IMG/VR virus record: IMGVR_UViG_3300009545_000018
Span: 248,001 to 312,000 of that record
Direction: 5' to 3' (one strand)
Length of the DNA: 64,000 nt
Shown in pieces: positions 28,469 through 46,496 of the stretch. Position 1 is the stretch's first letter, and every line of letters starts with the position of its first letter. The position numbers and the translations under genes are program-made. Below the pieces are notes generated by a model. It was given only the letters and a program-made list of their open reading frames with translations. It searched no databases and had not been told where the DNA came from.

Positions 28469-29196
28469 TTAATACTAATGATATTTTAAAATTAGCTAGC
28501 ACATATGAAGCAGTATGTGATGAATTATTAGCTATAGCCTACATTGTAAAAATGAAGGGCAAATATCGCGTAGTATCTGAAAAAGGTAAAAATTTAGGAG
28601 AATCAGACACTAGGGCAGGTGCTGAAAAAAGATTAAAACAAGTAGAATTTTTTAAACATAAAGATCATAATCAAGCAGATGATAAAGAATTAGATTTAAC
28701 TGATATTGAAGAATTTTCTTATTCCGCTATTGTACGCAAATTAAGACAAAAAGCATCAAAAGAGCAAGTTAAATTGTTTTTAACTTTATATAAAAAACAA
28801 TTTGATAAAGCAGTACGAGACAAAGTACAAAAGCCCGAAAAAATTGCATTACAAAATACCTTTATAAAATTTAAAAAAATAGTTAAACTTAAATATTCTA
28901 AAAAAATGATTAAAAATGCTGCCATTACTGAATTAGGCGATGCTGCTTCTGTTGGAGCCTATTTAGCTAATATTGTTAAATTTACTATTCAAAGAATTTC
29001 CCCCGAAAAAAGACAAGGTGCACTGGAAAGTTTAAAAAATAAACTTTATCATTTAAATGAAATAGAGCTATCTAATAAAAATTTACCAGCCTCAAGTTCT
29101 ATGGGTCAAAGTATAACATTCGTTAAGCATGTCTTATTTAATCATGATGCACAATACATTCGTGAAGTTATAAATAATCTAGTAAGGAATTTATAA
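28465..29196 (+). CDS. Hypothetical head-cluster protein
   Basis: Contains KYRVVSEKGKNLG..AEKRLKQVEFFKH module. Confidence 0.7.
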   Translation: MINTNDILKLASTYEAVCDELLAIAYIVKMKGKYRVVSEKGKNLGESDTRAGAEKRLKQVEFFKHKDHNQADDKELDLTDIEEFSYSAIVRKLRQKASKEQVKLFLTLYKKQFDKAVRDKVQKPEKIALQNTFIKFKKIVKLKYSKKMIKNAAITELGDAASVGAYLANIVKFTIQRISPEKRQGALESLKNKLYHLNEIELSNKNLPASSSMGQSITFVKHVLFNHDAQYIREVINNLVRNL

Positions 29197-30719: not shown

Positions 30720-30881
30720 ATGGCTTTTATAAAGCATGGTGATGGAAAAATAATGTCTGTTGTAGAAACAGAAAATCTTACTGAAGAGCAAAAAGAAACA
30801 GCTAAGAAAATTTCTGCTAACAATAGTAATAAATCTATAGAATCCAACGAAACTGATAACCAGGACGCTGGGAGAAATTAA
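30720..30881 (+). CDS. Small protein coupled to the protease gene
   Basis: MAFIKHGDG; TAATG overlap with 30881. Confidence 0.5.
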   Translation: MAFIKHGDGKIMSVVETENLTEEQKETAKKISANNSNKSIESNETDNQDAGRN

Positions 30882-33800
30882 TGTTTATAAAACTTGGTGA
30901 GTTAATAGAGATTAGTAGGATTGAAAATTCAGAATCCTGTATTCCTGCAGTAAGTGAACATATATTAAATGAATTTAAAAAATTTGCCACTAATTTAAAG
31001 AAAATCGCTCCTAAAGCTGAGGATTTTTTGTATTTCTCTGCTGTTATGATGCATGCAGCTGAAGCTGCCGGTATTAATGATGATGGTACTCCAAGATTAA
31101 CAGTTGCAGGAGAACCGGTTCAAGTAGGTTGGAATAAATCTGGTGGTACTTGGCGTTGGACAAGTAATGATCCTAATGTTAAGCCCTATAGAAATTCAAA
31201 TGGGGATATTTTTCCAGAAGAAGAATTAGTAAAGGCATATAAAAAGTGGGTAGGAAAACCTCTTTGCGTAGATCATAAATCAAGTTCAGTAGATCACGTA
31301 AGAGGTTTTATTGTTGATACCTATTATGATCGTAATTTAAAAAGAGTTATTGCTTTGTGTGCTTTAGATAAGGCAGGTTATCCACAATTAGCTAGACAGG
31401 TTTCTACGGGAGTATCTAACTGTGTATCTATGGGTACCGCAGTAGGTAGGGCAATTTGTAGTGATTGTGCCACTGTAGCCAGAACAGAACAAGATTTTTG
31501 TGATCATATGAGAAGAAAAACTTCTTATGGTGAAATTAACGTTGATCTAAATCCAATTGAACTATCAATTGTTGTAAATGGTGCTGATCCAAAAGCTAAT
31601 ATTAAAACCATTATTGCTGCAGCTAATACTTTAAATTCATATGTCGAAAGTAAAGCTAATGAATTAAAAAAGTTAACTGATAGACATTTTGTTGGAAAAA
31701 TTACAGTTAGTGATGGTGGCGGCGTTAATAATAAAGTTTCAGAGATTACTATTGATTCATCAGATTTAAATAAATTTAAGATTGATATGGAAGAAGCTTT
31801 TCAAAAATTACAAGAGATTAATGCTTCTGTAAATAATTCTGGAAAAGATACTAATGATCTTGCATTTAATCAATCGTCGGGATCTATTGCGATGGAAAAT
31901 TCCGCAACTCCCACAACAGATTCAGGATTGGCTCCACCTCACGAAAGATATGCTTCTGCTAACTTAGAAACAGAATCTATTAAAGAACTTCGTGAAGTTA
32001 CAAAAGTAATTGAACAAAAGTTGAGTCAAATGAAAGTAAGCATAGATAAGTTAGCAAATTCAAACACACAAGAGGAAAATATGTCAGGATCAGAGCTTAA
32101 TAAAAAAGGTTATTTTCAAGGAACTGAAGAGCCTAAACCAGGTCAAGTTCAATATCCAAAGGATCCAACCAATGAAAAGGTACGTGATTCTGAAGATAAA
32201 CACATGTTAGATCATGATGTAGGTCCAGTTGATGGATTACATCCAGGAGATTTAGAGCGCAAAAAAATGTTAGCTCGTGCAGAAGCTGAGGAAAGAGCTA
32301 TGCGTAGATCTGCTGTTGTTGATCTTGCTAAAAAGGCTTTAAAAAGTAAAGAAGCTTATTTCCAAGGCGGTGGTGGAGTAAACGAACCAACCCCAGGAAA
32401 AGTAAAATATCCTGCTGAAAAATTAAATGATCAGCTACGTGATCATGAAGATAAACAAATGGTAGGACAAAAACCATTTCCAGGTGTCGGATCAGTTGAT
32501 GGACTTCATCCAAGCCCCGATTCAGCAGATGTTGCTGACGAAAAGAAACGCAAAGAATTATTGCAAAGAGCTTCATTAAGAGCCAGATTCGTTAAAGCTG
32601 CTAATAATGATGGAACTCAAAATGTAGGCAAGAGTGCTTGGGAAGTGTTCTTAGGTGATAAATTACTATTAACTGCCTCAGTAAATGATTTATCTGGTAA
32701 TCGTGCAGAAATAATGTATGATAGTATTGCTACCAAAGAATTCGGTGCTAAATTAATTGAAAAAGTTAAAGTACAAGGCGCTGATAAAGTAAGTAGTTTA
32801 ATAAAGAGTGCTCAAGAACTTCCACCAGCAGCTCCTGCAGCTGAACCACCAGCAGCAGCTGATGTTGCTGCTCCTCCAGCTGATGCTGCACCAGCCGCAT
32901 CAGAAGATACGGGAGCTGAAGGTGATCCAAAAGCTAATGTAATGGAACTTTCTGAAAAAGTTAGAGATTTAGGATCTGATTTGGTTGAGGCTGTAAGAGC
33001 CTTAACTGGTGAACAAGCTGAAATGGGTGATTTAGAAGGTGGTATGGGAGCTACAGCATCTGATGTTAACTCTCTAAATACTATTAGAAAAGAACTAAAT
33101 TCAGCTTTAACTGATGCAATGAAAGAAACTGTTGCTGAATTAAATCAACATAAAGAAGAGTTAGATTTGATTGCAAGCTTGTATGATAAGGGAGCTGTTT
33201 CTGCATCCAATGAAACATTGGTAACTTCTGTTACTGATGACGTTATAAATGATGCTAAGAAATCAGTTGCAGAAGGATTTAATTTACTAAGTGCATTTGT
33301 CAAATATGCTCGTGGAACTAAAGCAATTGTCAAGCGCGCGGAATTTGAGGCTGAACTTGATGCATTAGCCGAGGGAGAATCTATGAAGGATGAGCATGAT
33401 AGTCACTCAAGTGACGATTTAATGAGTTTAATCCAAGACACTAATGCTGACTTGGATGCAGTTAAAGACATGATGGATGAAGGTTGTGATGGTGAATCTG
33501 AAGTATCTGATGCTGTTGATTCATTATCTGATGAAGTGGATGATAACAATTTAGATGCTAAACCAGAAGAGTTAAAAAATCTAGAAGTTAAGCCAGGAAC
33601 CGAAGTTCATGTTGTTGCTTCTACAGATTATGATAGCAAAGAAGGTCGTACAGCTCTACGTGCTAAGTTAGCTGCTGATGCTCTAAAAATTAGTCCATTA
33701 CTACATGATGCTCATCCAAAGGGTGGATTTACAACTGAGTTAGATGTTAAACCAGAAGGTGATTTAGCAAAAGTTGAAGATTTAGAAGAAGTTCATGATG

Positions 33801-34342
33801 CTATGATGGATGTTGCTCAAGCTCCACCAAAAGTACGTAAAGAAGCTGAAGCTATTAATAAATTAGTTTCAGAAGGTAAACTTGATGTTACTGATCTAGA
33901 TGCATTAGTTGCTGAAGGATTAGATAAAGATGCAGTTTCTTATTATAAGAAATTCTATAGTCAAGTTGATGGTGGATCTGAATTTGCTAATGAACTTGTA
34001 AAAGAACATGCAAAAGCTGAATTAGAAGAACAACTAAATACCTTCAAAGTTAAAATGGCAAGAGCTTATGAATTAACTTACGATATGGTTTCTCGTGGAT
34101 TGTGTCATGATGACAGAGTATCCATTTCAACTCAAGTTGAAGAGATCATGAAGTTTAATGATGAATCTTTTGACTCACTAAAGAGAGTTGTTGCAAAGCA
34201 TTCTCCAACTGTTAAAGTTGCCGGTCGTATGCCACAAGTTGGTATGATTGGTTCTGGTGAAATTAATTCCGCAGAATCTGATGGTGACTTATTTAGTCAA
34301 TTATCCTCTGCATTATCAACCTCTAAGAAGAGAAACTTTTAA
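30881..34342 (+). CDS. Prohead protease (HK97/assemblin fold, Zn insert) fused to long scaffold region
   Basis: NSNGDIF, GKPLCVDH, VSMG, CSDC..CDH, ELSIV..GADPKA; about 900-aa acidic coiled-coil C-terminus. Confidence 0.85.
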   Translation: MFIKLGELIEISRIENSESCIPAVSEHILNEFKKFATNLKKIAPKAEDFLYFSAVMMHAAEAAGINDDGTPRLTVAGEPVQVGWNKSGGTWRWTSNDPNVKPYRNSNGDIFPEEELVKAYKKWVGKPLCVDHKSSSVDHVRGFIVDTYYDRNLKRVIALCALDKAGYPQLARQVSTGVSNCVSMGTAVGRAICSDCATVARTEQDFCDHMRRKTSYGEINVDLNPIELSIVVNGADPKANIKTIIAAANTLNSYVESKANELKKLTDRHFVGKITVSDGGGVNNKVSEITIDSSDLNKFKIDMEEAFQKLQEINASVNNSGKDTNDLAFNQSSGSIAMENSATPTTDSGLAPPHERYASANLETESIKELREVTKVIEQKLSQMKVSIDKLANSNTQEENMSGSELNKKGYFQGTEEPKPGQVQYPKDPTNEKVRDSEDKHMLDHDVGPVDGLHPGDLERKKMLARAEAEERAMRRSAVVDLAKKALKSKEAYFQGGGGVNEPTPGKVKYPAEKLNDQLRDHEDKQMVGQKPFPGVGSVDGLHPSPDSADVADEKKRKELLQRASLRARFVKAANNDGTQNVGKSAWEVFLGDKLLLTASVNDLSGNRAEIMYDSIATKEFGAKLIEKVKVQGADKVSSLIKSAQELPPAAPAAEPPAAADVAAPPADAAPAASEDTGAEGDPKANVMELSEKVRDLGSDLVEAVRALTGEQAEMGDLEGGMGATASDVNSLNTIRKELNSALTDAMKETVAELNQHKEELDLIASLYDKGAVSASNETLVTSVTDDVINDAKKSVAEGFNLLSAFVKYARGTKAIVKRAEFEAELDALAEGESMKDEHDSHSSDDLMSLIQDTNADLDAVKDMMDEGCDGESEVSDAVDSLSDEVDDNNLDAKPEELKNLEVKPGTEVHVVASTDYDSKEGRTALRAKLAADALKISPLLHDAHPKGGFTTELDVKPEGDLAKVEDLEEVHDAMMDVAQAPPKVRKEAEAINKLVSEGKLDVTDLDALVAEGLDKDAVSYYKKFYSQVDGGSEFANELVKEHAKAELEEQLNTFKVKMARAYELTYDMVSRGLCHDDRVSISTQVEEIMKFNDESFDSLKRVVAKHSPTVKVAGRMPQVGMIGSGEINSAESDGDLFSQLSSALSTSKKRNF

Positions 34343-35000: not shown

Positions 35001-35222
35001 ATGTTTAAAATCGGCAGTCATGCAGATGATATTGTTAGTGAAATGGAAAAAGAGCTAAAAGCTCATCATGTTGAAAACACATATGGATTCAATAAACTAG
35101 CTAAGGCTGCCGATTATTTAAACTCTGCTGCTTCAATTTTTGAAGATGCTAATATGCCAGAAGTTTCTGATAAAATTACTGAAATATTAAAAAATTTGGC
35201 AACTGAATTAAATTCAAAATGA
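35001..35222 (+). CDS. Small helical protein, paralogue of 35219
   Basis: AADYLNSAASIFED. Confidence 0.7.
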   Translation: MFKIGSHADDIVSEMEKELKAHHVENTYGFNKLAKAADYLNSAASIFEDANMPEVSDKITEILKNLATELNSK

Positions 35223-35623
35223 ATAAAAAAGTGTTTGAAAATGAAATTTTAACCAATATGGATATGCTCTTGCAACCATCATTGGTTAAAGTTGCTTCTG
35301 CATCTAATGATTTAGGGCAGGCAGTTGAATATTTAAATTCAGCAGCTGAAATTTTTGAAGATTTAGGTTTCACTAAAAAATCAGAAGAAATTTTGCAACT
35401 TTTAGAATCTTTAGCAAATAAATCAAAAAATCCATTAAATATATCAGATTCACATACTAAAGGATTAACACCAGATAAACAAATAAAAAATTTGTTAGAT
35501 CATGGTACGCAATTTAATATGGCGGATGATGGTAATGCATTATTAGAATTAGATGTTAATGATGCTGATTTAGAAGTGTTAGAAAAAGAACTTTCTGATA
35601 TGGATTTTGAAGACGAATTATAA
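35219..35623 (+). CDS. Small helical protein, paralogue of 35001
   Basis: AVEYLNSAAEIFED. Confidence 0.7.
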   Translation: MNKKVFENEILTNMDMLLQPSLVKVASASNDLGQAVEYLNSAAEIFEDLGFTKKSEEILQLLESLANKSKNPLNISDSHTKGLTPDKQIKNLLDHGTQFNMADDGNALLELDVNDADLEVLEKELSDMDFEDEL

Positions 35624-35719: not shown

Positions 35720-36409
35720 ATTCTTAGACTTATACAAACCGGAAATTCGTTACCTGTATCTTTTATATGTGATCCATCAGCTGAGTTTCAGCCAGGAATG
35801 GTAGCAGAGTTAGTAGTTATTGGTAATCAGGTAATGGCAACAGTTAGTAATGGAACTGCTCCAATTGGAATTATTGATGACATTAGAACAAAAGCCTTTA
35901 CAAATGTTTCTTGGAATGAAGTAATTGTAGTTCCGGCAGCAGGCGTCGTTGGTCCGGGGGGAGTTATAGTTACTCCTGTTGATGTAAAAGCAGAATTAAA
36001 GAAGCCTAATATTATTGCAAATACATTTACTTCAACCGTAGATGTTGCATTAAATGCAACTAATGGCGTAATAACATTTGTAGCAGGAACTCCTTTAAAT
36101 TTCGACTTAACAGGAACAGGAAGTCCTAATGCTATTAGAACAATTGTAAATTATACATATTATGTAGCTAATATTCCAGGAGATGATAGTACTTCTGGTA
36201 GTGGTAGAATTACTGTGTGGTTTCAGAGAATGTTTTTTCAAACAGATCAATATGAAACTAATCAGCAATATCCGGTTAGAGCTAATTTGTTTGTGAGTGA
36301 AACTGGATTTCTAACTACTAGAAAACCAAGTGAATTTCATCCGGCTGTTGCAATGGTAACTGCCCCACCAACACCGATGAATCCTATGATCGAGGCGATG
36401 TATTACTGA
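35720..36409 (+). CDS. Putative capsid decoration-type protein (likely ATT start at 35720)
   Basis: TSGSGRITVW shared with 42779; frame open 26 codons upstream of ATG 35798 to an ATT preceded by AAGGA. Confidence 0.6.
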   Translation: MLRLIQTGNSLPVSFICDPSAEFQPGMVAELVVIGNQVMATVSNGTAPIGIIDDIRTKAFTNVSWNEVIVVPAAGVVGPGGVIVTPVDVKAELKKPNIIANTFTSTVDVALNATNGVITFVAGTPLNFDLTGTGSPNAIRTIVNYTYYVANIPGDDSTSGSGRITVWFQRMFFQTDQYETNQQYPVRANLFVSETGFLTTRKPSEFHPAVAMVTAPPTPMNPMIEAMYY

Positions 36410-36517: not shown

Positions 36518-37618
36518 ATGACTTTTAAGCACGTTAAATTTGAAGATTCAGCAACAATGCGCTCTTTAATTAAAGTAGCCTATGCAAAGGGACTAATTAA
36601 AGACGATCCAACATTAATTAAGAATTCCTCTTTAGAAAAAAAAGCAGATTATTCTCCAAGTTTTAATTTAATGGAGAATATTATTAAGCTTTGTGCAGGT
36701 CTTAGAGAACAGGGCATGGAAAAATATGCCAATGATTTAGAGTCCAAATTTATGGAATATAAAAAGGCAAACTCTTTATATGAAACTTCTAAAGAAACTG
36801 GAGAGGATATTGTAGATCAAGCACATCCACAAGGCTCACATAAAGTTTCTGATGTAGATGGAGATGCTATAGTAGAAACTATTTTAGATCAACATTTAAA
36901 AATTGTTAATGTTGTTAATAAAAAACCAACTGGTAAATTGTCAAGTAACACAGATATTTTAAAAGCTGTTAAGAAAGTTGTTGCCCAACAATTATCAATT
37001 AATGATTATTTACAAAAAATGAAAAATAGTGCTAAAGCCGTTAATCAAGGCTTTCATAGCGCTTCAGTATTAACTAGACCAATAACTTTTGTTACAGGTG
37101 AATTATTAGATGCTGTTAATGATTTAAATAAAGACAATATTAGTTTTGAAACATTAAATAATATTTATTTACTGATAACAAACACAAGAAAAGAATTAGA
37201 GCCCAAATTAGGTGGTCTCACTGGATTAGAAGAAGATAAGTGGAGATTTATTGAACCACATTTGAATGAAATTCAGAATGGTGTTTATAAAATTCAAGAA
37301 CTAATAAAAAATCCTCCCAAGAAAGAAGAGCCTACAGTTAATCCTATAATCGATGCATTTAATAAGCAAATTAATATAGTATTATCTACGCTTGCCACTT
37401 GGTCCAATATTGTTCAAACTGATCCTAGCTCTACTTCCGAAGAAAAGGCAGCAGGCAATAAATGGATTAATGATAAAAAAATTAGTATTATGAATTTGAA
37501 AACAAGATTTGATGCTTTAGATGATGCTTCAAAACTTGAAGCCCTAGATGGACAAAAACGTCGTTTACAAGAAATCACGGCAGAATTTCCTGAATTTAAA
37601 AAAACTTGGATAGACTAA
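36518..37618 (+). CDS. Hypothetical inner-head candidate
   Basis: AHP module; KxA motifs. Confidence 0.7.
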   Translation: MTFKHVKFEDSATMRSLIKVAYAKGLIKDDPTLIKNSSLEKKADYSPSFNLMENIIKLCAGLREQGMEKYANDLESKFMEYKKANSLYETSKETGEDIVDQAHPQGSHKVSDVDGDAIVETILDQHLKIVNVVNKKPTGKLSSNTDILKAVKKVVAQQLSINDYLQKMKNSAKAVNQGFHSASVLTRPITFVTGELLDAVNDLNKDNISFETLNNIYLLITNTRKELEPKLGGLTGLEEDKWRFIEPHLNEIQNGVYKIQELIKNPPKKEEPTVNPIIDAFNKQINIVLSTLATWSNIVQTDPSSTSEEKAAGNKWINDKKISIMNLKTRFDALDDASKLEALDGQKRRLQEITAEFPEFKKTWID

Positions 37619-38703
37619 TGTCAAATAAAATAAAACTATTAAAAGAAGCAATAGAAAAATTAGCTGAGGTACCAAAGCGTGGACCTAAGCCAATTACAAC
37701 TTCTATTCCATCTAAAGGAATACCAGCTAAACATCCTGGTGGTATTATTCCTAGTTCTCATTTTACTTCAAAAACAATAAATAACCCTACTGTACGAGAA
37801 ATGCAGCTTTCTATGCAAGATTTAGCACAAGCTGTTATGTCTGATTCTCAATCAGCTACTATGTCTTTAAAAAATAAAGACGTATTAAATCCTGGCGCTA
37901 CTGAATCTGTTCAAAAAGCAAAAAAATCTTTTAATGATTTTATTGCAGAACAATATATGGGCGGTTTAGATGAAACAAATAAAGGGGTTGAATGGAATAA
38001 AGATTCTAGTGTTGTAAAATATCCTGATAAACATCAAACACAAACTGATATTTATGAATTAGATGTTGTTATGAATACTTTAAGTAGGATTGGCTCTGAA
38101 AAAAGTGAATTTAAAGCTGATGGTAATTGGGACTGGAGAACAAATAATGCATTGAAAAATATGTTAGGATTTGCTTATGCTCTTTTACAATTAGAAGGCG
38201 ATTTTGGATTAAGTAATACTGTTTATAATATTTCTAATTGGCAAGATTTTAAAAATATTTTATCTAGTTACCGTGTAGAAGGAAATAGTGTTAATTTAGA
38301 TCCTCAAGATAAATCAGATAAGGCAGAAAAAATTACTAAACATTTAAAAGCTATCACTAGATTATATAATAATTTTAGACAACAAGTAATTGCCCGTCCA
38401 GAATACAGACCATTTATTGAAGGTAAGAGACCATTTGATCAATATGATAGTCATGGGTCAAATAAAGATACATTAAATGAAGCTGAGCAACAAATGGCAA
38501 AATCTGATGTTACCAAGGTTGATGGTATTTCTTATATTGCACCTAGATTACCAGACAAAAAATTAAATTATGTTCCATTAAAAGCATTAAGTAGTAAAGA
38601 AGAATATTTGAAATGGATGCTAGATTACGCAGGTGTTCCAAATGAGGAAACTGCTTGGAAGATATTTAACAATATTATTAAACCAAAAATTGAGGCGATG
38701 TAA
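37618..38703 (+). CDS. Protein with degenerate peptidoglycan-binding motif
   Basis: VREMQLSMQDL ... ADGNWDWRTNNALK. Confidence 0.55.
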   Translation: MSNKIKLLKEAIEKLAEVPKRGPKPITTSIPSKGIPAKHPGGIIPSSHFTSKTINNPTVREMQLSMQDLAQAVMSDSQSATMSLKNKDVLNPGATESVQKAKKSFNDFIAEQYMGGLDETNKGVEWNKDSSVVKYPDKHQTQTDIYELDVVMNTLSRIGSEKSEFKADGNWDWRTNNALKNMLGFAYALLQLEGDFGLSNTVYNISNWQDFKNILSSYRVEGNSVNLDPQDKSDKAEKITKHLKAITRLYNNFRQQVIARPEYRPFIEGKRPFDQYDSHGSNKDTLNEAEQQMAKSDVTKVDGISYIAPRLPDKKLNYVPLKALSSKEEYLKWMLDYAGVPNEETAWKIFNNIIKPKIEAM

Positions 38704-40265
38704 TGAGTTTTTTATATGAACAAGAAGTATTAAAATCACTTGCAAACGCCATTACCAAAAGGGCGCAGCAAAATGTACCTATTGGTAACGAAATTCAAGT
38801 TGCAAAAAAATTAGTTGCCAAATTAGCTAAAGAGGTTGGAGGTATACCAGAGTCTCCAAATATTTCGGCAGAAACTCCAACTCCAGTAGGTCTTAATACA
38901 GAAAATTTACAAAATATTGGTAACCTTCTGAAATTTCTTGATGATAATCAAATTAAGGTAGATGGTACTCGTGTAGCTTTTGATCAAGGAGAAAGTGAAA
39001 AATTACCAGAAGGAGAGCAAAATAAACTTTCTCCAATAACAATTAATGTTTCTAGAGATGCTGTTACTAGAAAATGGAATACTGCCGATTATTATGCTAA
39101 TATTCCATCTTTAATTAAATATGTAACATACTTGCAAAATAAAGCCAAACAAGAAGACAATAAAGTACTTGGTGTTTTAATTGGCAAATTAATTGATCAA
39201 GTTAATACTGTTAAACCAGATTCTGGACTATCTAGAAATCCAAAATCAGTTCCTGGAAAAAATGTTAATGAAGTATCTGAAGATACCGTCATTGATTCTT
39301 TTGGTAAAAATTTTGATTCTAAAACTTTATCTGTTGATAATGGTGGTTACGTATTATATGCTAAAGATTTAAAGAATAAAGAATCTTTAAATGCTTGGAT
39401 GATTAGTAATCCAGAAGCTCAAGTAATTACTTATGATAAAGCTGGAAGAAAATCTAGTATTAAATATTCTGATAGTCAAGTTGATAAATGTGTTATTATT
39501 AATGTTCTTTATAAGCGCGCTATTAATTTATCTAATAACTCCCAATCCGCTAAAGATACAGAAAAATATTCATTTTATGTTAAAAAAATACAAGAAATTG
39601 GATCTACTATTACGGGACCTAATGGACAAACCTGCAGTATTGGAGCTGAATATATTAGTAAACCAATTAGTAATAGTGGTGATACTGAATTAGCAGGATA
39701 TCATACAAATAAAGAGCAAACGGGTCCAAATGGTAGTGGTAGCAGCGGAACTAATGTTACTGCTCAAATTGGTCGTATTATTTCTGAATTACCATTATCT
39801 ATTGAAGATATTAATTTGGATAGAATTTTTAGTTTTACTAGAGAATTAAGTAATTTAATTAGTGGATCTCAAGGTGCTGAAGCGGCTGATCGTAATAATA
39901 GGATTATGGGATATATAAATGATTTAGGTCAAAAAATGGTTGCATTAAAAGGATTAACTAAACATAATGCGGCTATTTTCCCAACAAACATTTCAGCTCC
40001 AGAATTTGCTAGTATGTTAAAAAATCCTGCAAATTATCTTCCCACATTAGAAGGGTTAGCAACTATAGTTAATTTAGTTAGAATGATTGTTGCTGAATTT
40101 TATAGCGCATATAGAACACAAATTTCTGGCATGAGCGACCAATATAAACAATTATTACGTGGACAAATTGGAACTAATAGAGATGATAGTTCTATTTATT
40201 CTAGAAATATCGAAGATATTAATTATCTGAGAAATAAATATAATCAAGTTTTAAGAGTAAAATAA
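38703..40265 (+). CDS. Hypothetical inner-head candidate
   Basis: 520 aa; ITKRAQQ near N-terminus; TAATG coupling. Confidence 0.7.
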   Translation: MSFLYEQEVLKSLANAITKRAQQNVPIGNEIQVAKKLVAKLAKEVGGIPESPNISAETPTPVGLNTENLQNIGNLLKFLDDNQIKVDGTRVAFDQGESEKLPEGEQNKLSPITINVSRDAVTRKWNTADYYANIPSLIKYVTYLQNKAKQEDNKVLGVLIGKLIDQVNTVKPDSGLSRNPKSVPGKNVNEVSEDTVIDSFGKNFDSKTLSVDNGGYVLYAKDLKNKESLNAWMISNPEAQVITYDKAGRKSSIKYSDSQVDKCVIINVLYKRAINLSNNSQSAKDTEKYSFYVKKIQEIGSTITGPNGQTCSIGAEYISKPISNSGDTELAGYHTNKEQTGPNGSGSSGTNVTAQIGRIISELPLSIEDINLDRIFSFTRELSNLISGSQGAEAADRNNRIMGYINDLGQKMVALKGLTKHNAAIFPTNISAPEFASMLKNPANYLPTLEGLATIVNLVRMIVAEFYSAYRTQISGMSDQYKQLLRGQIGTNRDDSSIYSRNIEDINYLRNKYNQVLRVK

Positions 40266-41377
40266 TGTCAAGTAACAGTGAAATTAGATTTTATACAGAT
40301 GCAATGATAGTTGAAACATTATTATCAGATATTGAAATTTATAAAAAAGCTGATGCTGGAACAATATCTCAACTTACTGATTCTGTTAAAAATTATGTTT
40401 CAAATCATATTGATCCAGAAGATCGTACTGGTAGTGTTCTTAATATGTTGGCGCCAGGTGCCATTTCTATGATGTTTAAAGCTATGGGTTTTGGCAAAAT
40501 AGGTTTATTGTTTGGTTTGGCAGCAAGTGTATTCCATATTGATGTTACTGGAATTTTATCATCTATTTATGATGAAATTAAATCTTTATTATCAAGTGGT
40601 AAACAAATAACTTCTTCACAAATTGATGGTTTAGTAAATTCTGCTGTTCAATCTCGCGGCGGAGGAGAAGCTGATTTATCACAAATTCAAACAGCTTCTA
40701 TACAAGAACAATTAAAAGATGTTAAATTTTTAAAAATATCTTTAATATCTTATGATAAAGATATTGTTAATATTGAAAAAAGTGCAGACTTTACAATAAC
40801 CTCTTCAAGAAAAGATAAGACACTCAATATTTTAGGAAGAGTATTAAGCTGGGTCTTTAAAATTGTTCTGTCGAGTGGTGGATTTATGGTTGCGGGCGAT
40901 GCAGTTAATAAATTTTTGGGTAGACCCAATGCTTTTGATGGAAGTATTAAAAATAATAAACCAGTAGAAAATACTGTAATAGAATCCATTCCAAGTAGCA
41001 CTCAACATAAATTTCCTCTTAAAGAAGGATTTATAGATACTAGATATAATATTGGAAATAATAATTGGATTGAAAAAATAAATAATAGTAAGTCTAATAT
41101 TGAAAATATGATAATTGGATTTGCAAAAGAAATTTATAATGGTTTAAATGGTCAAGAGTCTGTTATTAGAAATTCTTCTAAATTTCAAGATATTGTAGAA
41201 GAAATTACTTGGTATAATCATACTGTTGCGGGCGATCCAATTGTTTTTATACCAAAGAAATTTATTTCTAAAAAACAATTAGTAGATAATTTTATTGATG
41301 AAGTGGCGGCAAATTCAAACATTAAACCATCAAATAATTTACAAACAAACCTGCCACAAGGTGCTTATTTAACATAA
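40265..41377 (+). CDS. Protein with Gly-rich hydrophobic helices (ejection-protein candidate)
   Basis: MMFKAMGFGKIGLLFGLAASVFHI; ILGRVLSWVFKIVLSSGGFMVAG. Confidence 0.6.
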   Translation: MSSNSEIRFYTDAMIVETLLSDIEIYKKADAGTISQLTDSVKNYVSNHIDPEDRTGSVLNMLAPGAISMMFKAMGFGKIGLLFGLAASVFHIDVTGILSSIYDEIKSLLSSGKQITSSQIDGLVNSAVQSRGGGEADLSQIQTASIQEQLKDVKFLKISLISYDKDIVNIEKSADFTITSSRKDKTLNILGRVLSWVFKIVLSSGGFMVAGDAVNKFLGRPNAFDGSIKNNKPVENTVIESIPSSTQHKFPLKEGFIDTRYNIGNNNWIEKINNSKSNIENMIIGFAKEIYNGLNGQESVIRNSSKFQDIVEEITWYNHTVAGDPIVFIPKKFISKKQLVDNFIDEVAANSNIKPSNNLQTNLPQGAYLT

Positions 41378-41427
41378 TAGCGCATATAAAGACATCTATT
41401 TGTCAACTATCTTAATGGTGAAAATTA

Positions 41428-42660
41428 ATGAGAAAATCAGATATATTTGAAAGTTTTGTCAAAATAGCCGAAGAAAAGGGATTAATCTCTAAGGATGCGC
41501 CAGATAAAGCTAAAGCTGCCTTGGAAAAAAATCCTAGAATGTCAGCATTAACTGCTGATGACATTACAAAATTATATCATGTTAAACCTGATGCTCCTAA
41601 AGGCATGGAATATGATAAAAATATTATGGAAATTGCTCATCCAAATTCAGTTGTAGTGTCACCATCATATGATAAATTAAATGGATTAGTTGAAAACAAT
41701 ATAGAAAGACAAAATATATTACTTCATATTGTTAATAAACCAACTGATGGATTAAGCATTAATCGCAAATATGCCGAAAAAGATTTAGTATTATCTTTAG
41801 TTAGTTTAGGTAATCATTTAGACAATGTCAATAAAGAAAATTTAAGAATATTAGCAGATACTTGTTTAACACAAGTTGCTGAAAAAACTATTGAAAAAAA
41901 GGCTTTAGCTCCATTGGCTTGGGCAGTTTTAGTGGGAGTTCCATCTTTAATTGGAGCTATTTATGCTCAACAACATCTTCCAAATATTGATCATGGATTT
42001 AGAGAAAATCATATCAAATTAATATCTGAATTAGATGATTTACTAAATTCTAATTCAAATTTTGGTGTTGGCTCTACTTATACAAAATCATTTATAGATA
42101 GTGTTTCTGATTTTAAAAATAAATTAGAAGAATTTTATTCTTTATATTATAAGAACCAAGATATAATTACTAAATTAGAAACTCCAAAAACTGCTAAAGA
42201 TCTAATTCAATTAGCATCAGAACCATCAGGTTCAAATGCGGTTCAGGCATATAATGAATTAGTAAAATCATTTGCAAACATCTTACCACTTATTAATGGT
42301 ATGGAACGTAATTTTAAATCTGAAAGTTTTAAATCTAGGCAAGTAGAAGATAAGGGATTTATTACATCTTTGATTGATAAAACTGAAATATTACATGGAC
42401 CTAATGGATTAATTGCAGATGATTTTCAAGATGTAGTTAATGCAATTCCTCCCTATAAAAAATCTGTACAAGAAATATTAAAAGTTTTTGCTGAAGCTCA
42501 AAATTTACAACATAAAGCCAAAGAAGATTTAGAAAGTGCTGCCACTGAATCTTCACAATTTATAGAGCCTTCTAAGTCAGTTACAGAAGTTGATAATGAG
42601 GCAGATGGCTTAGGTAAAGACCTAGAAGATCTGGGAAAAGAATTTCCAAATATTATATAA
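41428..42660 (+). CDS. Protein with AHP module and one hydrophobic helix
   Basis: IAHPNS; IEKKA-LAPLAWAVLVGVPSLIGAIYA. Confidence 0.65.
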   Translation: MRKSDIFESFVKIAEEKGLISKDAPDKAKAALEKNPRMSALTADDITKLYHVKPDAPKGMEYDKNIMEIAHPNSVVVSPSYDKLNGLVENNIERQNILLHIVNKPTDGLSINRKYAEKDLVLSLVSLGNHLDNVNKENLRILADTCLTQVAEKTIEKKALAPLAWAVLVGVPSLIGAIYAQQHLPNIDHGFRENHIKLISELDDLLNSNSNFGVGSTYTKSFIDSVSDFKNKLEEFYSLYYKNQDIITKLETPKTAKDLIQLASEPSGSNAVQAYNELVKSFANILPLINGMERNFKSESFKSRQVEDKGFITSLIDKTEILHGPNGLIADDFQDVVNAIPPYKKSVQEILKVFAEAQNLQHKAKEDLESAATESSQFIEPSKSVTEVDNEADGLGKDLEDLGKEFPNII

Positions 42661-42778
42661 ATTCTAGGCATAAGAGTATATTTAAGTAATTGCGCATTAA
42701 TTTGCGCTAAATTTGTAAGTTTTAGGTGTAAGTTTATATTGCTAAAAATATTTAGCACAAATTAATTAGGATAAAATC

Positions 42779-43450
42779 ATGGCTCTTAAACCACTTCAAG
42801 CAATTTTGCCATTAGGACAATTCGATGGCTATGACTCTACTACTCTTTCTCTTTTAGGCGGAGAAGTTGTATATTTAGCTGCTGTTACTAACACATCAGC
42901 AACTGATAAAGCAGCTTCTGACGTATTTGATGGATATAACCCAGTTACTACTCGTCCATGTGTCAAGTTAGCAACTACAAACGGCACTGCTGTTCGTCCA
43001 CTAATGTTAGCTGACGAAGGTATTGCTGGTTATGGTACTCTATTTGGTACCGTTGTTGGTGGAACAGTAGGACAAGTATCTACTGGTGGTACTGTATTAG
43101 GACCACATACTGCTACAGGTTCTGGCAAGGTAACTTGTTGGGCACAACCAGGTTTGTATGCTGTTTCTACTGATGCAGTTGACACTACAGCTGGTGGTAT
43201 TTTAACTACCAATACTGCATGTGTTCCAGGTACTCCATTGTACTACAACTCTTCTGGTAAATTAACTTTGACTGCAAATCAAGTTTCTGGTGCTCCAATA
43301 GTTGGATCTTTCGTTGAATTTACTACTGGTGGCTCTTTGGTATCCACTCCAAATAACTTAGTTGGTACATTCAATCCACCAGATGGTGCTTTGACTGTTA
43401 GTGCCCGCAGCTATACTTGGGCAGTATTGTTTTTCAATCCAAATCCATAA
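42779..43450 (+). CDS. Capsid decoration/cement protein (putative)
   Basis: G/T/A-rich beta protein just upstream of MCP, C-ending codon bias, TATGSGKVTCW. Confidence 0.6.
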   Translation: MALKPLQAILPLGQFDGYDSTTLSLLGGEVVYLAAVTNTSATDKAASDVFDGYNPVTTRPCVKLATTNGTAVRPLMLADEGIAGYGTLFGTVVGGTVGQVSTGGTVLGPHTATGSGKVTCWAQPGLYAVSTDAVDTTAGGILTTNTACVPGTPLYYNSSGKLTLTANQVSGAPIVGSFVEFTTGGSLVSTPNNLVGTFNPPDGALTVSARSYTWAVLFFNPNP

Positions 43451-43483
43451 TTTGAATTGATAAAGTAATATGAATGAATAAAT

Positions 43484-43511
43484 AAAAGAGCGAACTTTGG
43501 TTCGCTCTTTT
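43484..43511. terminator. Bidirectional intrinsic terminator
   Basis: AAAAGAGCGAAC-TTTG-GTTCGCTCTTTT between convergent genes. Confidence 0.88.
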
Positions 43512-43560
43512 GCTTTTATAATAACAAAAAAATATAATTAAATTATATAAAGCCATCAAT

Positions 43561-44262
43561 TTATTTTGATAGCTTTTTTAATTCCCAGACAAATTGGTAT
43601 GTTTCGCCATAATTTCTTTTTTTTAAATTAAATCTAATTTCTGGTGAAACATGATCATATCCATTATTAAATTCTGTATTTTCTAATACATTTTGTAGAT
43701 TTATTTCGTTTACAATCTGTAATCCACATTTTTCAATCATTTCTTTTAAAGAAAAATAAGTAAAAAATTTAATATGGGTTTTATCTAATAAACCAGTTTC
43801 CCTATAAGTGAATTTATTATTCCATAAGTCGATTAAGATTGCATTATGAGCTACATTTGGAATGGAAATCCAAATACTACCATTTTCTTTTAATAATGAT
43901 TTGCTTTTATTTAAAATTTCTTCTGGATTATGCAAATGTTCTAGTACATCAGCAAATATAATATAATCTAAATTATTTATTCCACAATTATAAACATGTG
44001 TAAAAAAATCATCTCTTTCTAAATCTCCCCAATATTTTCCATAAAATGATCTATCTGCCCATTGAGAGGCTTGTTTTCCAGCTTTTTCATTATGTTCAAC
44101 AATATAAACAGTACAATTTAAAGTTTCTTTTAAATATTTTGTCATTCTTCCATGAGCACATCCACATTCTAAAACAGAAGAATTAGGGATAATATTCTTT
44201 AATATTGTTGAATTAGAGTTTTCTGACCCCATATCTAACGTAAAATCGTACTGTGTTTCCAT
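43561..44262 (-). CDS. Class I SAM-dependent methyltransferase
   Basis: VLECGCAHG, DYIIFADVLEHL, SIPNVAH, GLLDKTHIKFFT. Confidence 0.9.
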   Translation of the reverse strand: METQYDFTLDMGSENSNSTILKNIIPNSSVLECGCAHGRMTKYLKETLNCTVYIVEHNEKAGKQASQWADRSFYGKYWGDLERDDFFTHVYNCGINNLDYIIFADVLEHLHNPEEILNKSKSLLKENGSIWISIPNVAHNAILIDLWNNKFTYRETGLLDKTHIKFFTYFSLKEMIEKCGLQIVNEINLQNVLENTEFNNGYDHVSPEIRFNLKKRNYGETYQFVWELKKLSK

Positions 44263-44382
44263 AAAAATTAATATAACTCATCTTTTTTTCATAAAAATAG
44301 TAATATTAAGTTATCTAATTAACGCACTTATGTGCAGCTGGCATTTTGCTGGCAATATTTCAAATAAATTAGTGGAGACACA

Positions 44383-45393
44383 ATGAATATGTTTAACAGC
44401 AAAGGCGAAATGAACGCCAGCTCTTTGAAAGATGCTTTAACTCAATTAGTTAAGTATGCTTCTATCCTAGAAGAGAATATGCCAGCTAACGCAGGTTTAG
44501 CCGGTCAACCATCAGTTTCTGATGACAAGCGTGATGAATTAATCTCTCGTGCCATTATGACACAAGATGGTAAAGTTGCTTTAGCTCAAGCTATGGCAAA
44601 CCCAATTCGTAAGAACTTAGATTACCACGGTATTGCTCGTAGAGCCTTAGTAGTTGATCCATTGCCACAAGGTGCAAATCCAACTTACGAACGCGATATT
44701 GACGTTGCTGCCGTAGTTATCTCTTCTAACGGAACTGGTCCAGAGTCTCGCGTATTCGGTGACCGTATCGTAGTTCCAGAATTCGAAATCTTTGCTAACC
44801 CAACTGTACGTATTGCTGAGGTTAAGAGACGTAGATTCAACGTAATTGACCGTGCTGTTCAAAAAGCTCGTCAAGAAATCATGGCACAAGAAGATGCTAA
44901 CATCTTTGCTGCCTTAGATGCCGCTGCTTCTGTTGAAAATACTATAACAGACGTTGCTGATGCTGGTCTTCTAAAGAGAGACTTAGTTGAAATTAAGCAA
45001 CAAATTGATCGTTGGGACTTGGTAACTACCAAGTACTTCATGAACATCTCTGAGTTCACTGATATCTTGAAGTGGGGTTCAGGTGGTGGTCAAGGTACTT
45101 CTGGTGGAGACTTCGATCCAGTAACAATGCGTGAAGTATTGCAAACTGGCTTGTATGCTCATATCTGGGGAACTGATATTATGGTATCTAAGATTGTCCC
45201 ACCTGGCACGATCTATGGTGCGGCCGATCCGGAGTTCGTAGGCGTCATGCCAATTCGTCAAGACATTGAAGTCTTGCCAGCTGATGAACCAAAACAACTT
45301 AAATTAGGTTGGGTTGTTTCTGAGATAATAGGATTGGCTATAGTTAACCCACGTAGTGTTGCAGCAGGTCGTAAGTCAACTACTGTCGCTTAA
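44383..45393 (+). CDS. Major capsid protein (HK97 fold)
   Basis: 336 aa after protease/decoration genes; strong codon bias; PIRKNLDY, PEFEIFANP, QEDANIF, GLAIVNPR; strong RBS and terminator. Confidence 0.85.
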   Translation: MNMFNSKGEMNASSLKDALTQLVKYASILEENMPANAGLAGQPSVSDDKRDELISRAIMTQDGKVALAQAMANPIRKNLDYHGIARRALVVDPLPQGANPTYERDIDVAAVVISSNGTGPESRVFGDRIVVPEFEIFANPTVRIAEVKRRRFNVIDRAVQKARQEIMAQEDANIFAALDAAASVENTITDVADAGLLKRDLVEIKQQIDRWDLVTTKYFMNISEFTDILKWGSGGGQGTSGGDFDPVTMREVLQTGLYAHIWGTDIMVSKIVPPGTIYGAADPEFVGVMPIRQDIEVLPADEPKQLKLGWVVSEIIGLAIVNPRSVAAGRKSTTVA

Positions 45394-45449: not shown

Positions 45450-46496
45450 CTATTTTTTGTAATATCTTTTGTTATATCCTCTTGTTCCATCTAAAATTAA
45501 TTTATCAGTTTCAATGTTTTTTAAAAGAAGCTCTTGATATAATTTATATTTACGATCTAAATATATAGATGCATCCATATATAACCAATCCAAAAAATGT
45601 GCAATTTGTCGATTACCAGATGAATTAATTGTGTAAACATTTTTATCTTTAACATCATTATAAGGTTCGCCAAAATTTATATTAGTCGCCCCAGAAATAA
45701 TGTCTTTCATAGATTGACAAAACTCTTTGGTTGAAATTATTTTTAATGTAGTGGAACGAGTTTTCACATTGGTTAATTTTACCCCACCATCTCCATCAAA
45801 ATAACCTCTAATAAAATGTCTTTGTAATTCATGGTTAGTCAGCCATTCTGGGAACTTTATAATTAAACTTTTCTTTTGTGGACTTCCTAACTCTTCTAAT
45901 TTTTGACACATATATTTACTATTAATTGTAAAATAAGAATAATAAAAAATTTTTTCTATATCTTTCTTTTTTCTCACTCTTTTAATTTCTTTAATATGAT
46001 GTTCAGGATTTTCTTTATAAATTAATTTTACTAATTTTTGTAAAATATCTTTATCTTTTTGAGCTAATTCTATTTTAATATAATTGCTTTCTTTACAATT
46101 GAAACCATCAGCATATAAAAATCCTAAGAAATAAGCCTTTTCTTCAGTATCAATATTATCAAAAAAATGTTCATCAATTTCATATTTACGATGACATTCT
46201 TCAGCACTTCGCCTATTAATGTTATTTTTTTCTAAATATCTTAAAATTAAAGTATTTTGAACGTTGAATTTTTTAGCTATTTTTGGAGCTGATAATCCCT
46301 GTTGGTACATTTCTATAATTTTTAATTCATCTTCAATTTGAATTTTCTTACGAAGAATTAGTCGTCTTTTAATTCCATTCTTTTTAAGAATTTTTAAAAT
46401 ACTATTTGGATGAATATTGAACTGTTTTGCAATAGTATCAGATCCTAAACCTGAAGTATAAAGCTCAATTATTTTTTGTATATCTTGTGGTGTCAT
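45450..46496 (-). CDS. Free-standing LAGLIDADG homing endonuclease with two N-terminal HTHs
   Basis: KAYFLGFLYADG, HFIRGYFDGDG; IIELYTSG..IAKQF and IIEMYQQG..IAKKF. Confidence 0.9.
   Translation of the reverse strand: MTPQDIQKIIELYTSGLGSDTIAKQFNIHPNSILKILKKNGIKRRLILRKKIQIEDELKIIEMYQQGLSAPKIAKKFNVQNTLILRYLEKNNINRRSAEECHRKYEIDEHFFDNIDTEEKAYFLGFLYADGFNCKESNYIKIELAQKDKDILQKLVKLIYKENPEHHIKEIKRVRKKKDIEKIFYYSYFTINSKYMCQKLEELGSPQKKSLIIKFPEWLTNHELQRHFIRGYFDGDGGVKLTNVKTRSTTLKIISTKEFCQSMKDIISGATNINFGEPYNDVKDKNVYTINSSGNRQIAHFLDWLYMDASIYLDRKYKLYQELLLKNIETDKLILDGTRGYNKRYYKK

What the first reader, a model, noticed from the sequence alone, without database searches (positions are those of the whole stretch)
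36518..42660. Five-gene candidate ejectosome: PG-binding motif and hydrophobic helices behind KxA sites
Seen: four genes joined by TAATG overlaps plus 41428, lying between the scaffold and capsid genes. 37618 has a split PG-binding-like signature (VREMQ..L / ADGNWDWRTNNAL). 40265 has two Gly-rich hydrophobic helices. In 41428 a 21-residue hydrophobic helix begins immediately after IEKKA. No signal peptides. Known: T7 gp14-16 and P22 ejection proteins are packaged internally and form a trans-envelope channel. Inference: pro-proteins packaged via N-terminal leaders, with membrane-inserting segments unmasked by cleavage.
Basis: partly seen in the sequence, partly recalled or inferred. Interest (0 to 1): 0.62.

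Follow-up and report, generated by a model that had tools for sequence, protein, structure and literature searches.

The report
Megaphage head-operon cassette of internal proteins
Five unannotated genes sit in the head-assembly operon of a 448-kb uncultivated phage related to phage G; they most likely encode proteins packed inside the capsid and trimmed by the head protease, two carry membrane-like helices, and a T7-style "ejectosome" or peptidoglycan-binding role is not shown.

Summary
The genes are real. There are five + strand ORFs (366, 361, 520, 370 and 410 aa). The first four are joined by TAATG overlaps. They lie between a protease-scaffold fusion (30881-34342) and the major capsid gene (44383-45393). 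The host genome is a 447,763-bp phage whose capsid protein is 54% identical to Bacillus phage G gp27.

The cassette, in the same order, is present in all six related huge-phage contigs examined. None of the five proteins matches Pfam, PHROGs, any isolated phage genome or any PDB sequence. The two that were folded match no solved fold.

- **Hydrophobic segments:** confirmed and conserved. These are the 21-residue helix of 41428 (aa 160-180, invariant Lys157 before it) and two Gly-rich segments of 40265.
- **"KxA sites":** these sharpen to a hydrophobic-x-K-x-A motif. It is over-represented in the scaffold (11 seen, about 2 expected) and in the five proteins (13 seen, 3 expected), mostly in their first 40 residues. 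It also occurs in the capsid protein's N-terminal extension.
- **PG-binding claim:** fails. PF01471 is not detected and the fold is a long-helix bundle.

Best reading: these are protease-processed internal head proteins, comparable to T4 internal proteins or SPN3US gp53/54. Ejection and membrane insertion are inferred, not shown. Interest is moderate.

The parts
36518..37618 (+). g1, 366 aa. Its N-terminal ~140 aa domain is shared with g5. Conserved hydrophobic-x-K-x-A sites lie at about aa 17, 33-39 and 67.
   Evidence: (hhalign g1 vs g5 families: E 0.0047, 102 columns)
37618..38703 (+). g2, 361 aa. It has an N-terminal helix (aa 3-15), an I-x-K-x-A site at aa 12-16, a Pro-rich disordered linker (aa 19-55) and then a long-helix bundle.
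38059..38160 (+). g2 aa 148-181.
   Evidence: It is invariant or nearly so in 64 sequences. It is not a PF01471 match and has no PG-binding fold match.
38703..40265 (+). g3, 520 aa. An N-terminal helix is followed by K-x-(A/G/S)-Q at aa 19-22, with K19 and Q22 invariant in 4 genomes. It is the fastest-diverging member.
40265..41377 (+). g4, 370 aa. A helical domain (aa 1-220) is followed by a small alpha/beta domain (aa 250-350). The site L-x-K97%-x-A90%-Q sits at aa 25-30 in a low-confidence loop. The fold is unmatched.
   Evidence: pLDDT 82; best Z 4.5; 571 clusters
40433..40555 (+). g4 hydrophobic Gly-rich segment 1 (aa 57-97)
40832..40900 (+). g4 hydrophobic segment 2 (aa 190-212, containing the GFMVAGD stretch)
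41428..42660 (+). g5, 410 aa. It has an N-terminal domain paralogous to that of g1, one transmembrane-like helix and a ~230-aa C-terminal domain.
   Evidence: (434 homologues)
41905..41967 (+). g5 hydrophobic helix (aa 160-180). It is preceded by invariant K157 (hydrophobic-K-K-x-A/G) and followed by LY-x-QQH.
30881..34342 (+). Context: a 1153-aa fusion of prohead protease (aa ~34-270; 33% identity to phage G gp19) with an acidic scaffold-like tail. It carries 11 hydrophobic-x-K-x-A sites along its length.
44383..45393 (+). Context: major capsid protein. It has an N-terminal stretch of about 41 aa with no counterpart in phage G gp27, and this stretch contains LVKYA(S/A) at aa 22-27.
43483..43512 (+). 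Context: the first strong terminator-like hairpin (13-bp stem) downstream of the cassette. It suggests one transcript from the scaffold gene to 42779-43450.

Best explanation
The five genes form a conserved cassette of the head-morphogenesis operon in a clade of uncultivated huge phages related by capsid protein to phage G. I read them as internal head proteins.

Proposed mechanism (all inferred):
1. Each protein is made as a precursor with an N-terminal leader. The leader is 15-40 residues in g1-g4. In g5 it may be the whole ~158-residue domain that g5 shares with g1.
2. The leaders bring the proteins into the assembling prohead.
3. The prohead protease (N-terminal domain of 30881) trims them at hydrophobic-x-K-x-A sites. 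It uses the same sites to cut up its own scaffold tail and to remove the capsid protein's N-terminal extension.
4. The mature bodies stay in the DNA-filled head and leave with the DNA.
5. g5 (one strongly hydrophobic helix directly after its site) and g4 (conserved Gly-rich hydrophobic helices folded inside a helical bundle) then become free to insert into the host membrane.

Shown: gene structure, conserved synteny, operon context, motif enrichment and conservation, hydrophobic helices, and the absence of any known domain or fold.

Inferred: packaging, cleavage, ejection and membrane insertion.
For: **Position and co-transcription**
- The order is TerL 21962, portal 23885, protease-scaffold 30881, the five genes, 42779, then the capsid gene 44383.
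- No strong terminator-like hairpin is predicted before 43483. TAATG coupling joins g1-g4.

**Conservation**
- Gene order is identical in six huge-phage contigs of 70-467 kb.
- g4 has 571 clusters at 50% identity. g5 has 434 homologues.
- The five proteins are only 21-53% identical across genomes, while the capsid protein is 90-91% identical. Ejection proteins of podoviruses are likewise reported to diverge rapidly (PMC8954989).

**Processing-type motif**
- [LIVFM]-x-K-x-A occurs 11 times in the scaffold against 1.7 expected, and 13 times in the five proteins against 3.0 expected. It occurs 0-1 times in terminase, portal, 35798 and 42779. The excess repeats in relatives: 26 against 11.3.
- At family level the site is conserved while its flanks vary. 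In g4 it is K97%/A90%, in a loop with pLDDT below 50.
- In the five proteins the sites cluster in the first 40 residues, whereas in the scaffold they are spread along the chain. This matches the T4 and giant-phage pattern, where internal proteins lose a leader and scaffold is cut into fragments (PMC5694885).
- The protease carries the site itself, and it is conserved in phage G gp19.

**Paralogous N-terminal domain**
- g1 and g5 share an N-terminal domain. This parallels SPN3US ejection proteins gp53/gp54, which have ~125-residue propeptides with conserved N-termini.

**Hydrophobic helices**
- The helices of g4 and g5 are conserved. Within the window's crude ORF set they are the only clear TM-like segments: of the other two hits, 35798 is a Gly/Val/Pro-rich stretch and the ORF at 57979 lies inside the 57918-58670 gene in another frame.
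- T7 gp16 sets a precedent: its predicted TM regions are globular before ejection (PMC8954989).
Against: - There is no direct evidence that any of the five is in a virion, is cleaved or is ejected.
- No homologue exists in phage G or any isolated phage, so no proteome can be borrowed.
- The motif was defined after looking at the data, and its information content is low. In one relative (L002) the excess is weak: 6 sites against 3.9 expected.
- In the window's own g1, g2 and g4 the residue after Ala differs from the family consensus.
- The g4 segments are only moderately hydrophobic (KD 1.6-1.7 in the window copy) and could simply be a buried core.
- Contractile-tailed phages do not need head proteins to cross the envelope.
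- The one complex prediction (g4 + g5) gave no answer.
Confidence: 0.45

Rival explanations
1. They are prohead core or scaffolding proteins. They build the internal core on which a very large capsid assembles, are cut by the protease and are expelled before or during DNA packaging, so they are absent from mature virions and never meet the host envelope.
For: - In T4 the genes next to the protease and capsid genes encode core proteins gp67, gp68 and gp22 (PMC5694885).
- The proteins are largely helical.
- The motif is shared with the scaffold.
- Giant capsids need elaborate cores.
Against: - Sites cluster near the N-termini instead of being spread along the chain as in the 1153-aa scaffold.
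- g2 and g4 fold into confident globular domains rather than extended coiled coils.
- A conserved membrane-type helix in g5 has no obvious use in a soluble core.
Confidence: 0.25
2. g5, and perhaps g4, are inner-membrane proteins of the infected cell. They anchor or initiate prohead assembly at the membrane, as T4 does with the portal and gp40 (recalled from memory, not checked here). The other three are assembly chaperones. None is in the virion.
For: - g5 has a single strongly hydrophobic helix with Lys-Lys on its N-terminal side. This fits a signal-anchor with the N-terminal domain in the cytoplasm.
- The T4 prohead is attached to, and later released from, the host membrane.
Against: - This topology would put the conserved 230-aa C-terminal domain of g5 outside the cytoplasm, away from the prohead.
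- The protease-type sites, and a site placed exactly at the start of the helix, are not explained.
- The g4 segments are too short and too weakly hydrophobic for ordinary TM helices.
Confidence: 0.12
3. One reading: this is a T7/P22-like ejectosome. A peptidoglycan-binding subunit (g2) and channel subunits (g4, g5) assemble into a trans-envelope DNA conduit.
For: - The hydrophobic helices and N-terminal sites are real.
- T7 gp14-like and gp16-like proteins also carry predicted TM helices that are hidden before ejection.
Against: - No PG-binding domain is present.
- The only cell-wall enzyme domain in the head module is in a separate gene outside the cassette, 27007-28068 (SLT, 23.8 bits against a cut-off of 21.3).
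- There is no fold or sequence match to solved ejection proteins.
- The closest cultured relative has a contractile tail (PMC8570332).
Confidence: 0.1
4. They are external capsid accessories (cement, vertex or neck proteins), or non-structural proteins such as lysis or exclusion factors that merely sit in the operon.
For: - The functions are unknown.
- Phage G keeps an endolysin inside its head module.
Against: - The flanking genes 35798 and 42779 already look like the shell accessories. They are beta-rich, highly conserved, lack the motif, and 42779 occupies the place of phage G's decoration gene gp26.
- The five proteins are far larger than holins and diverge much faster than shell proteins.
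Confidence: 0.08

Closest known systems
Inner-head / ejection proteins of giant myophages (SPN3US gp53/gp54/gp47; phiKZ gp93-family and gp86) and T4 internal proteins with capsid-targeting sequences
   Same: - Several unannotated proteins are encoded with the head genes.
- They have N-terminal leaders ending in a short protease motif that the capsid protein and scaffold also carry.
- A paralogous pair (g1, g5) shares a long conserved N-terminal domain while the rest has diverged, as in SPN3US gp53/54 (PMC5694885).
   Different: - There is no sequence similarity (no PHROG hit).
- The motif is hydrophobic-x-K-x-A rather than (S/A/G or L/I)-x-E.
- Conserved membrane-type helices are present in two members.
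- Nothing has been shown by mass spectrometry.
T7 gp14/gp15/gp16 and P22 gp7/gp20/gp16 ejection proteins (DNA ejectosome)
   Same: - A set of consecutive, fast-evolving, mostly helical proteins.
- Some have predicted TM segments that could be hidden in a soluble fold before ejection (PMC8954989).
   Different: - This set has five genes inside the head operon of a phage whose cultured relative is contractile-tailed.
- No homology or fold match was found.
- There is no cell-wall hydrolase domain inside the set.
- Oligomeric tube formation is untested.
Bacillus phage G head module (gp14 portal ... gp19 protease ... gp26 decoration, gp27 capsid)
   Same: The capsid protein is 54% identical and the protease domain 33% identical. 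The overall order portal - protease - capsid is the same.
   Different: - Phage G has no detectable homologue of any of the five proteins.
- Its protease is not fused to a scaffold.
- Its capsid protein lacks the N-terminal extension.

Membership tests
PG_binding_1 (PF01471) peptidoglycan-binding domain, claimed for 37618 | Match to the Pfam profile at or near its gathering score | tested here: not met
   There is no hit for the window protein at E <= 1. Only 2 of 64 homologues hit, best E 0.01. The genome-wide six-frame search is empty at E <= 0.1, while the same search responded in 10 of 14 control genomes.
PG_binding_1 (PF01471) peptidoglycan-binding domain, claimed for 37618 | Compact three-helix bundle fold matching solved PG-binding domains | tested here: not met
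   In the AF2 model (pLDDT 78), aa 148-196 form a short helix, a loop and a 24-residue helix within a long-helix bundle. No PG-binding chain appears among the Foldseek or VIA-align matches. The profile search against PDB sequences is empty.
Podovirus DNA-ejectosome proteins (T7 gp14-16 / P22 gp7, gp20, gp16) | Sequence or fold homology to a known ejection protein | tested here: not met
   There are no PHROG or Pfam hits. For g2 and g4 there is no significant PDB fold match. Profile searches of PDB sequences with the g1, g2, g4 and g5 alignments give nothing.
Podovirus DNA-ejectosome proteins (T7 gp14-16 / P22 gp7, gp20, gp16) | Predicted TM regions in the outer-membrane (gp14-like) and inner-membrane (gp16-like) subunits | tested here: inconclusive
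   g5 has one strong conserved helix. g4 has two moderately hydrophobic conserved regions. Only hydropathy was computed; no dedicated TM predictor was available.
Podovirus DNA-ejectosome proteins (T7 gp14-16 / P22 gp7, gp20, gp16) | Packaged in the capsid and ejected into the envelope ahead of DNA | not testable with these tools
   The phage is uncultivated. The only run that holds the sequence is a rhizosphere DNA metagenome.
Protease-processed internal head proteins of large myophages (T4 IPs; phiKZ/SPN3US inner-head proteins) | Encoded and transcribed with the head-morphogenesis genes | tested here: met
   Gene order is shown. Synteny is conserved in six contigs. No strong terminator-like hairpin is predicted before 43483.
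Protease-processed internal head proteins of large myophages (T4 IPs; phiKZ/SPN3US inner-head proteins) | N-terminal propeptide ending in the cleavage motif used by the phage's prohead protease on capsid and scaffold proteins | tested here: inconclusive
   A shared hydrophobic-x-K-x-A motif is enriched and conserved in the five proteins, the scaffold, the capsid protein's N-terminal extension and the protease. Cleavage itself has not been observed, and the motif was defined post hoc.
Protease-processed internal head proteins of large myophages (T4 IPs; phiKZ/SPN3US inner-head proteins) | Homology to a described internal-protein family | tested here: not met
   There is no PHROG hit, no tblastn hit in 50,697 phage records, and the only BFVD match is an uncharacterised homologue.

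The most novel reading that the evidence does not exclude
A widespread clade of huge phages, whose closest cultured relative has a contractile tail, packages a protease-activated membrane-insertion module in the capsid. The module consists of g4, which has a fold unmatched in PDB, BFVD and the ESM Atlas, and g5, whose transmembrane helix would be exposed at the new N-terminus by cleavage at an invariant Lys-x-Ala site. The prohead protease would use a Lys/Ala-based specificity unlike the Glu-based motifs of T4 and phiKZ. This would be an ejectosome-like device that arose independently of the podovirus one.
Probability: 0.2. Interest if true: 0.7.

Novelty: new variant of a known kind. Interest (0 to 1): 0.45.

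Why it matters
Huge phages are almost all uncultivated, and most of their structural genes are unannotated. This cassette is conserved across hundreds of such genomes.

The shared hydrophobic-x-K-x-A motif suggests a simple, testable rule for recognising substrates of the head protease, and therefore capsid contents, from sequence alone. If g4 and g5 really are delivered to the host membrane, they would show how a phage with a capsid this large prepares the envelope for entry of a 450-kb genome. They would also add two new protein folds or families to the small set of known ejection proteins.

Tried and rejected
- **Close and family searches:** megablast and tblastn of all five proteins against 50,697 phage records found nothing. 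Pfam and PHROGs gave only noise.
- **IMG/VR pattern scan with g4:** no confirmed relative.
- **Phage G:** profile searches of the whole genome and of its head module were empty for the families tested (g1/g5, g2, g4).
- **Extra paralogues of the g1/g5 N-terminal domain in the genome:** none found.
- **Fold searches:**
  - g2: Foldseek/PDB best E 0.48; VIA-align best Z 7.6, which is background for helical bundles.
  - g4: Foldseek/PDB best E 0.56; VIA-align best Z 4.5; BFVD found only an uncharacterised homologue; ESM Atlas by shape gave TM <= 0.28 over the whole model.
- **ESM Atlas feature search for g4 and g5:** no usable hit.
- **PDB sequence-profile searches for g1, g2, g4, g5:** nothing meaningful.
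- **Complex prediction for g4 + g5:** score 0.00, verdict 'no answer'. This is not evidence either way (the first attempt failed because the machine was busy).
- **Comparison of 42779 and 35798 with phage G decoration protein gp26:** not significant.
- **Sequencing runs:** one DNA metagenome, probably the source, and no RNA run.
- **Rejected readings:**
  - Holin or lysis cassette: the proteins are too large and sit in a head operon.
  - Tape-measure-like protein: only Foldseek rows with probability <= 0.15.
Full report
**What the window is**

The window is bases 248,001-312,000 of a single 447,763-bp contig with about 30% G+C. It is an IMG/VR virus record that CheckV rates as complete.

The gene at 44383-45393 is a major capsid protein (phrog_2522, E 1e-79). 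It is 54% identical to gp27 of Bacillus phage G, the 498-kb contractile-tailed megaphage (PMC8570332).

Upstream on the same strand lie:
- a large terminase (21962);
- a portal (23885);
- a protein with an SLT lytic transglycosylase domain (27007);
- a 1153-aa protein at 30881, whose first ~270 residues are 33% identical (E 1e-32) to the phage G head-maturation protease gp19, and whose remainder is acidic and scaffold-like.

The sequence occurs in one rhizosphere DNA metagenome, which is probably its source. No RNA data exist.

**The observation**

All three internal junctions read TAATG. No strong terminator-like hairpin is predicted between 30881 and a 13-bp-stem hairpin at 43483-43512. The cassette is therefore probably co-transcribed with the scaffold gene on one side and the 223-aa gene 42779 on the other. 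42779 occupies the place of phage G's decoration gene.

None of the five proteins has an N-terminal signal-like stretch.

The hydrophobic features are real and conserved:
- In g5 (41428), aa 160-180 form a 21-residue helix with KD 2.02. In 120 homologues the hydrophobic peak always falls at residues 155-184 (median KD 1.98). Lys157 is invariant, and LY-x-QQH follows the helix.
- In g4 (40265), the Gly-rich segments aa 57-97 and 190-212 are conserved. G211 and D212 are invariant in 71 sequences, and 99% of 120 homologues reach KD 1.6.
- These are the only clear membrane-like segments in the window's crude ORF set. The other two hits are a Gly/Val/Pro-rich stretch of 35798 and an out-of-frame ORF at 57979 inside the 57918 gene.

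**Relatives**

No isolated phage has any of the five proteins. Megablast, tblastn and PHROGs are all empty. Profile searches of the phage G genome and head module found no homologue of g1, g2, g4 or g5.

In metagenomes the families are large:
- g4 has 134 word-search hits and 571 clusters at 50% identity.
- g2 has 63 hits.
- g5 has 434 hits.

Many lie on contigs of 200-467 kb. In all six contigs whose neighbourhood I read, the order is the same: protease-scaffold, three small genes, a 229-aa gene, then g1-g2-g3-g4-g5, a ~225-260-aa gene and the capsid gene. Only homing-endonuclease genes are occasionally inserted.

Across these genomes the capsid protein is 90-91% identical, while the five proteins are 21-53% identical.

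**What the proteins look like**

g2, folded with 64 sequences (pLDDT 78), has four parts:
- an N-terminal helix;
- a disordered Pro-rich linker;
- a bundle of long helices;
- a small C-terminal alpha/beta unit.

g4, folded with 71 sequences (pLDDT 82), is a multi-helix domain that includes the hydrophobic helices, followed by a small alpha/beta domain.

Neither model matches a solved structure:
- Foldseek best E is about 0.5 for both.
- VIA-align best Z is 7.6 for g2 and 4.5 for g4, both below the background for helical proteins.
- BFVD returns only an uncharacterised homologue of g4 from an uncultured phage.
- The ESM Atlas gives nothing.

g1 and g5 share an N-terminal domain of about 110-140 residues. 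Shared motifs are S-x-x-(M/F)-x-S-x-x-K-(V/I)-A-x-x-K-G, A-H-P and K-x-P-x-G. Profile-profile comparison gives E 0.0047 over 102 columns. No further paralogue exists in the genome.

**The PG-binding claim**

The second belongs to a contiguous helix-loop-helix at aa 148-181 with D-G-x-W-x-x-R-T, which does recall PG_binding_1. Tested, the resemblance fails:
- Pfam gives no hit for this protein, and only 2 of 64 homologues hit, at E 0.01 or worse.
- A six-frame search of the genome with PF01471 is empty, while the control genomes respond.
- The fold is not the three-helix PG-binding bundle.

The only cell-wall enzyme domain in the head module is the SLT domain of 27007-28068, which lies outside the cassette.

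**The 'KxA sites'**

Aligned families show a conserved hydrophobic-x-K-x-A in otherwise variable, exposed stretches:
- g4: L65%-x-K97%-x-A90%-Q55% at aa 25-30, in a loop with pLDDT below 50.
- g2: I89%-x-K84%-x-A89% at aa 12-16, just before the disordered linker.
- g5: hydrophobic-K68%-K100%-x-A79%/G17% at aa 155-159, immediately before the helix.

g1 and g3 have K-x-(A/S/G)-(S/Q) at aa 33-36 and 19-22 in all four genomes compared.

The same pattern occurs elsewhere in the head module:
- The capsid protein has LVKYA(S/A) at aa 22-27, inside an N-terminal stretch with no counterpart in phage G gp27.
- The small head-operon proteins 34356, 35001 and 35219 have it.
- The protease has it at aa 39-43, conserved in phage G gp19.

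Counting [LIVFM]-x-K-x-A over a crude gene set of the whole genome gives 0.0015 per residue:

| Protein(s) | Sites observed | Expected | Significance |
|---|---|---|---|
| 1153-aa protease-scaffold | 11, spread along its length | 1.7 | 0 of 300 shuffles reach 11; Poisson 2e-6 |
| The five proteins together | 13, nine within the first 40 residues | 3.0 | Poisson 2e-5 |
| Terminase, portal, 35798, 42779 | 0-1 each | | |

In three related genomes the five orthologues have 6, 10 and 10 sites, against 3.9, 3.4 and 4.0 expected from shuffles.

Caveats: I defined the motif after seeing the data, its information content is low, and one relative shows little excess.

**Interpretation**

The pattern has three parts: short N-terminal leaders ending in a shared site, the same site scattered through the scaffold, and the same site in the capsid protein's N-terminal extension. 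This is the signature of prohead-protease substrates in T4 and in the giant phages phiKZ and SPN3US. In those phages internal and ejection proteins lose a targeting propeptide and scaffold is cut into fragments. The SPN3US paralogues gp53/gp54 keep conserved N-termini on ~125-residue propeptides (PMC5694885).

I therefore read the cassette as a set of internal head proteins processed by the 30881 protease.

Retention in the mature head and ejection with the DNA are inferred from two observations. The sites are N-terminal rather than dispersed. And g4 and g5 carry conserved hydrophobic helices that make little sense in a soluble core. There is a precedent in T7 gp16, whose predicted TM regions are folded globularly before ejection (PMC8954989).

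Competing readings are listed with probabilities under the rival explanations.

The one complex prediction I could run (g4 with g5) gave no verdict and is not used as evidence.

**Comparison and novelty**

The cassette works most like the inner-head and ejection proteins of giant myophages. It is not a member of any described family, because every homology test failed. It is not a T7-type ejectosome by any feature that could be tested.

What is new, if the reading holds:
- a Lys/Ala-based processing motif instead of the Glu-based motifs of T4 and phiKZ;
- membrane-type helices in capsid-packaged proteins of a phage whose closest cultured relative is contractile-tailed;
- in g4, a fold unmatched in PDB, BFVD and the ESM Atlas (g2 likewise matched nothing in PDB).

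I rate it a new variant of a known kind, of moderate interest. The decisive experiments are virion or viral-fraction proteomics with N-terminal mapping, and a protease co-expression assay.

Noticed in passing
window 27007-28068 (+): This 353-aa protein has an N-terminal SLT lytic transglycosylase domain (Pfam 23.8 bits against a cut-off of 21.3). Its PHROG hits are to baseplate hub, lytic tail protein and 'internal virion protein with endolysin domain'. It sits two genes after the portal. It is the credible cell-wall-cutting virion protein of this head module, and it lies outside the five-gene cassette.
   Followed up: partly
window 35720-36409 (+): The highly conserved 203-aa ORF at 35798 (76-83% identical in relatives) is 229 aa in three related genomes, where it starts MLRLVQ. 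In the window the matching in-frame codon at 35720 is ATT (reading ILRLIQ), preceded by AAGGAAAA. The gene therefore probably starts at an ATT codon 78 bases upstream of the listed ATG.
   Followed up: partly
window 30881-34342 (+): The prohead protease (homologous to the 300-aa phage G gp19) is fused to an acidic tail of about 880 residues with Ala/Pro-rich and Asp/Glu-rich stretches and 11 hydrophobic-x-K-x-A sites. Relatives have the same ~1150-1220-aa fusion. It looks like a protease-scaffold fusion that would cut up its own tail.
   Followed up: partly
window 35001-35222 and 35219-35623 (+): These two small adjacent genes are paralogues (BLASTP E 2e-8). One overlaps the next by 4 bases, and both are conserved in relatives. 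35001 starts MFK-x-(A/G)-S in three of four genomes. That is the same motif, placed at the extreme N-terminus.
   Followed up: no
window 25762-27003 (+) and 28465-29196 (+): Two unannotated genes between portal and protease also carry the motif near their N-termini (MQKTAQ at aa 1-6; ILKLAS at aa 7-12). 25762 has three sites against about 0.6-0.9 expected. They may belong to the same class of protease substrates.
   Followed up: no
window 43561-44262 (-) and 45450-46496 (-); loci L004 1506-2015, 5249-5845, 7977-8528; L005 5445-6212: The head module is invaded by selfish or accessory genes that differ between relatives. The window has a minus-strand gene between 42779 and the capsid gene that looks like a SAM-dependent methyltransferase (not tested; absent from L002, L004 and L005). 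It also has a gene after the capsid gene that looks like a homing endonuclease with an HTH domain (not scanned here; the L005 gene in the same position has only faint LAGLIDADG and HTH hits). L004 and L005 carry GIY-YIG endonuclease genes before g1, and L004 has another between g2 and g3.
   Followed up: no
window 36518-45393 versus L002, L004, L005: There is a large rate contrast within one operon. The capsid protein is 90-91% identical and the 35798 protein 76-83% identical across these genomes. The five cassette proteins are only 21-53% identical, and g3 is the most divergent.
   Followed up: yes
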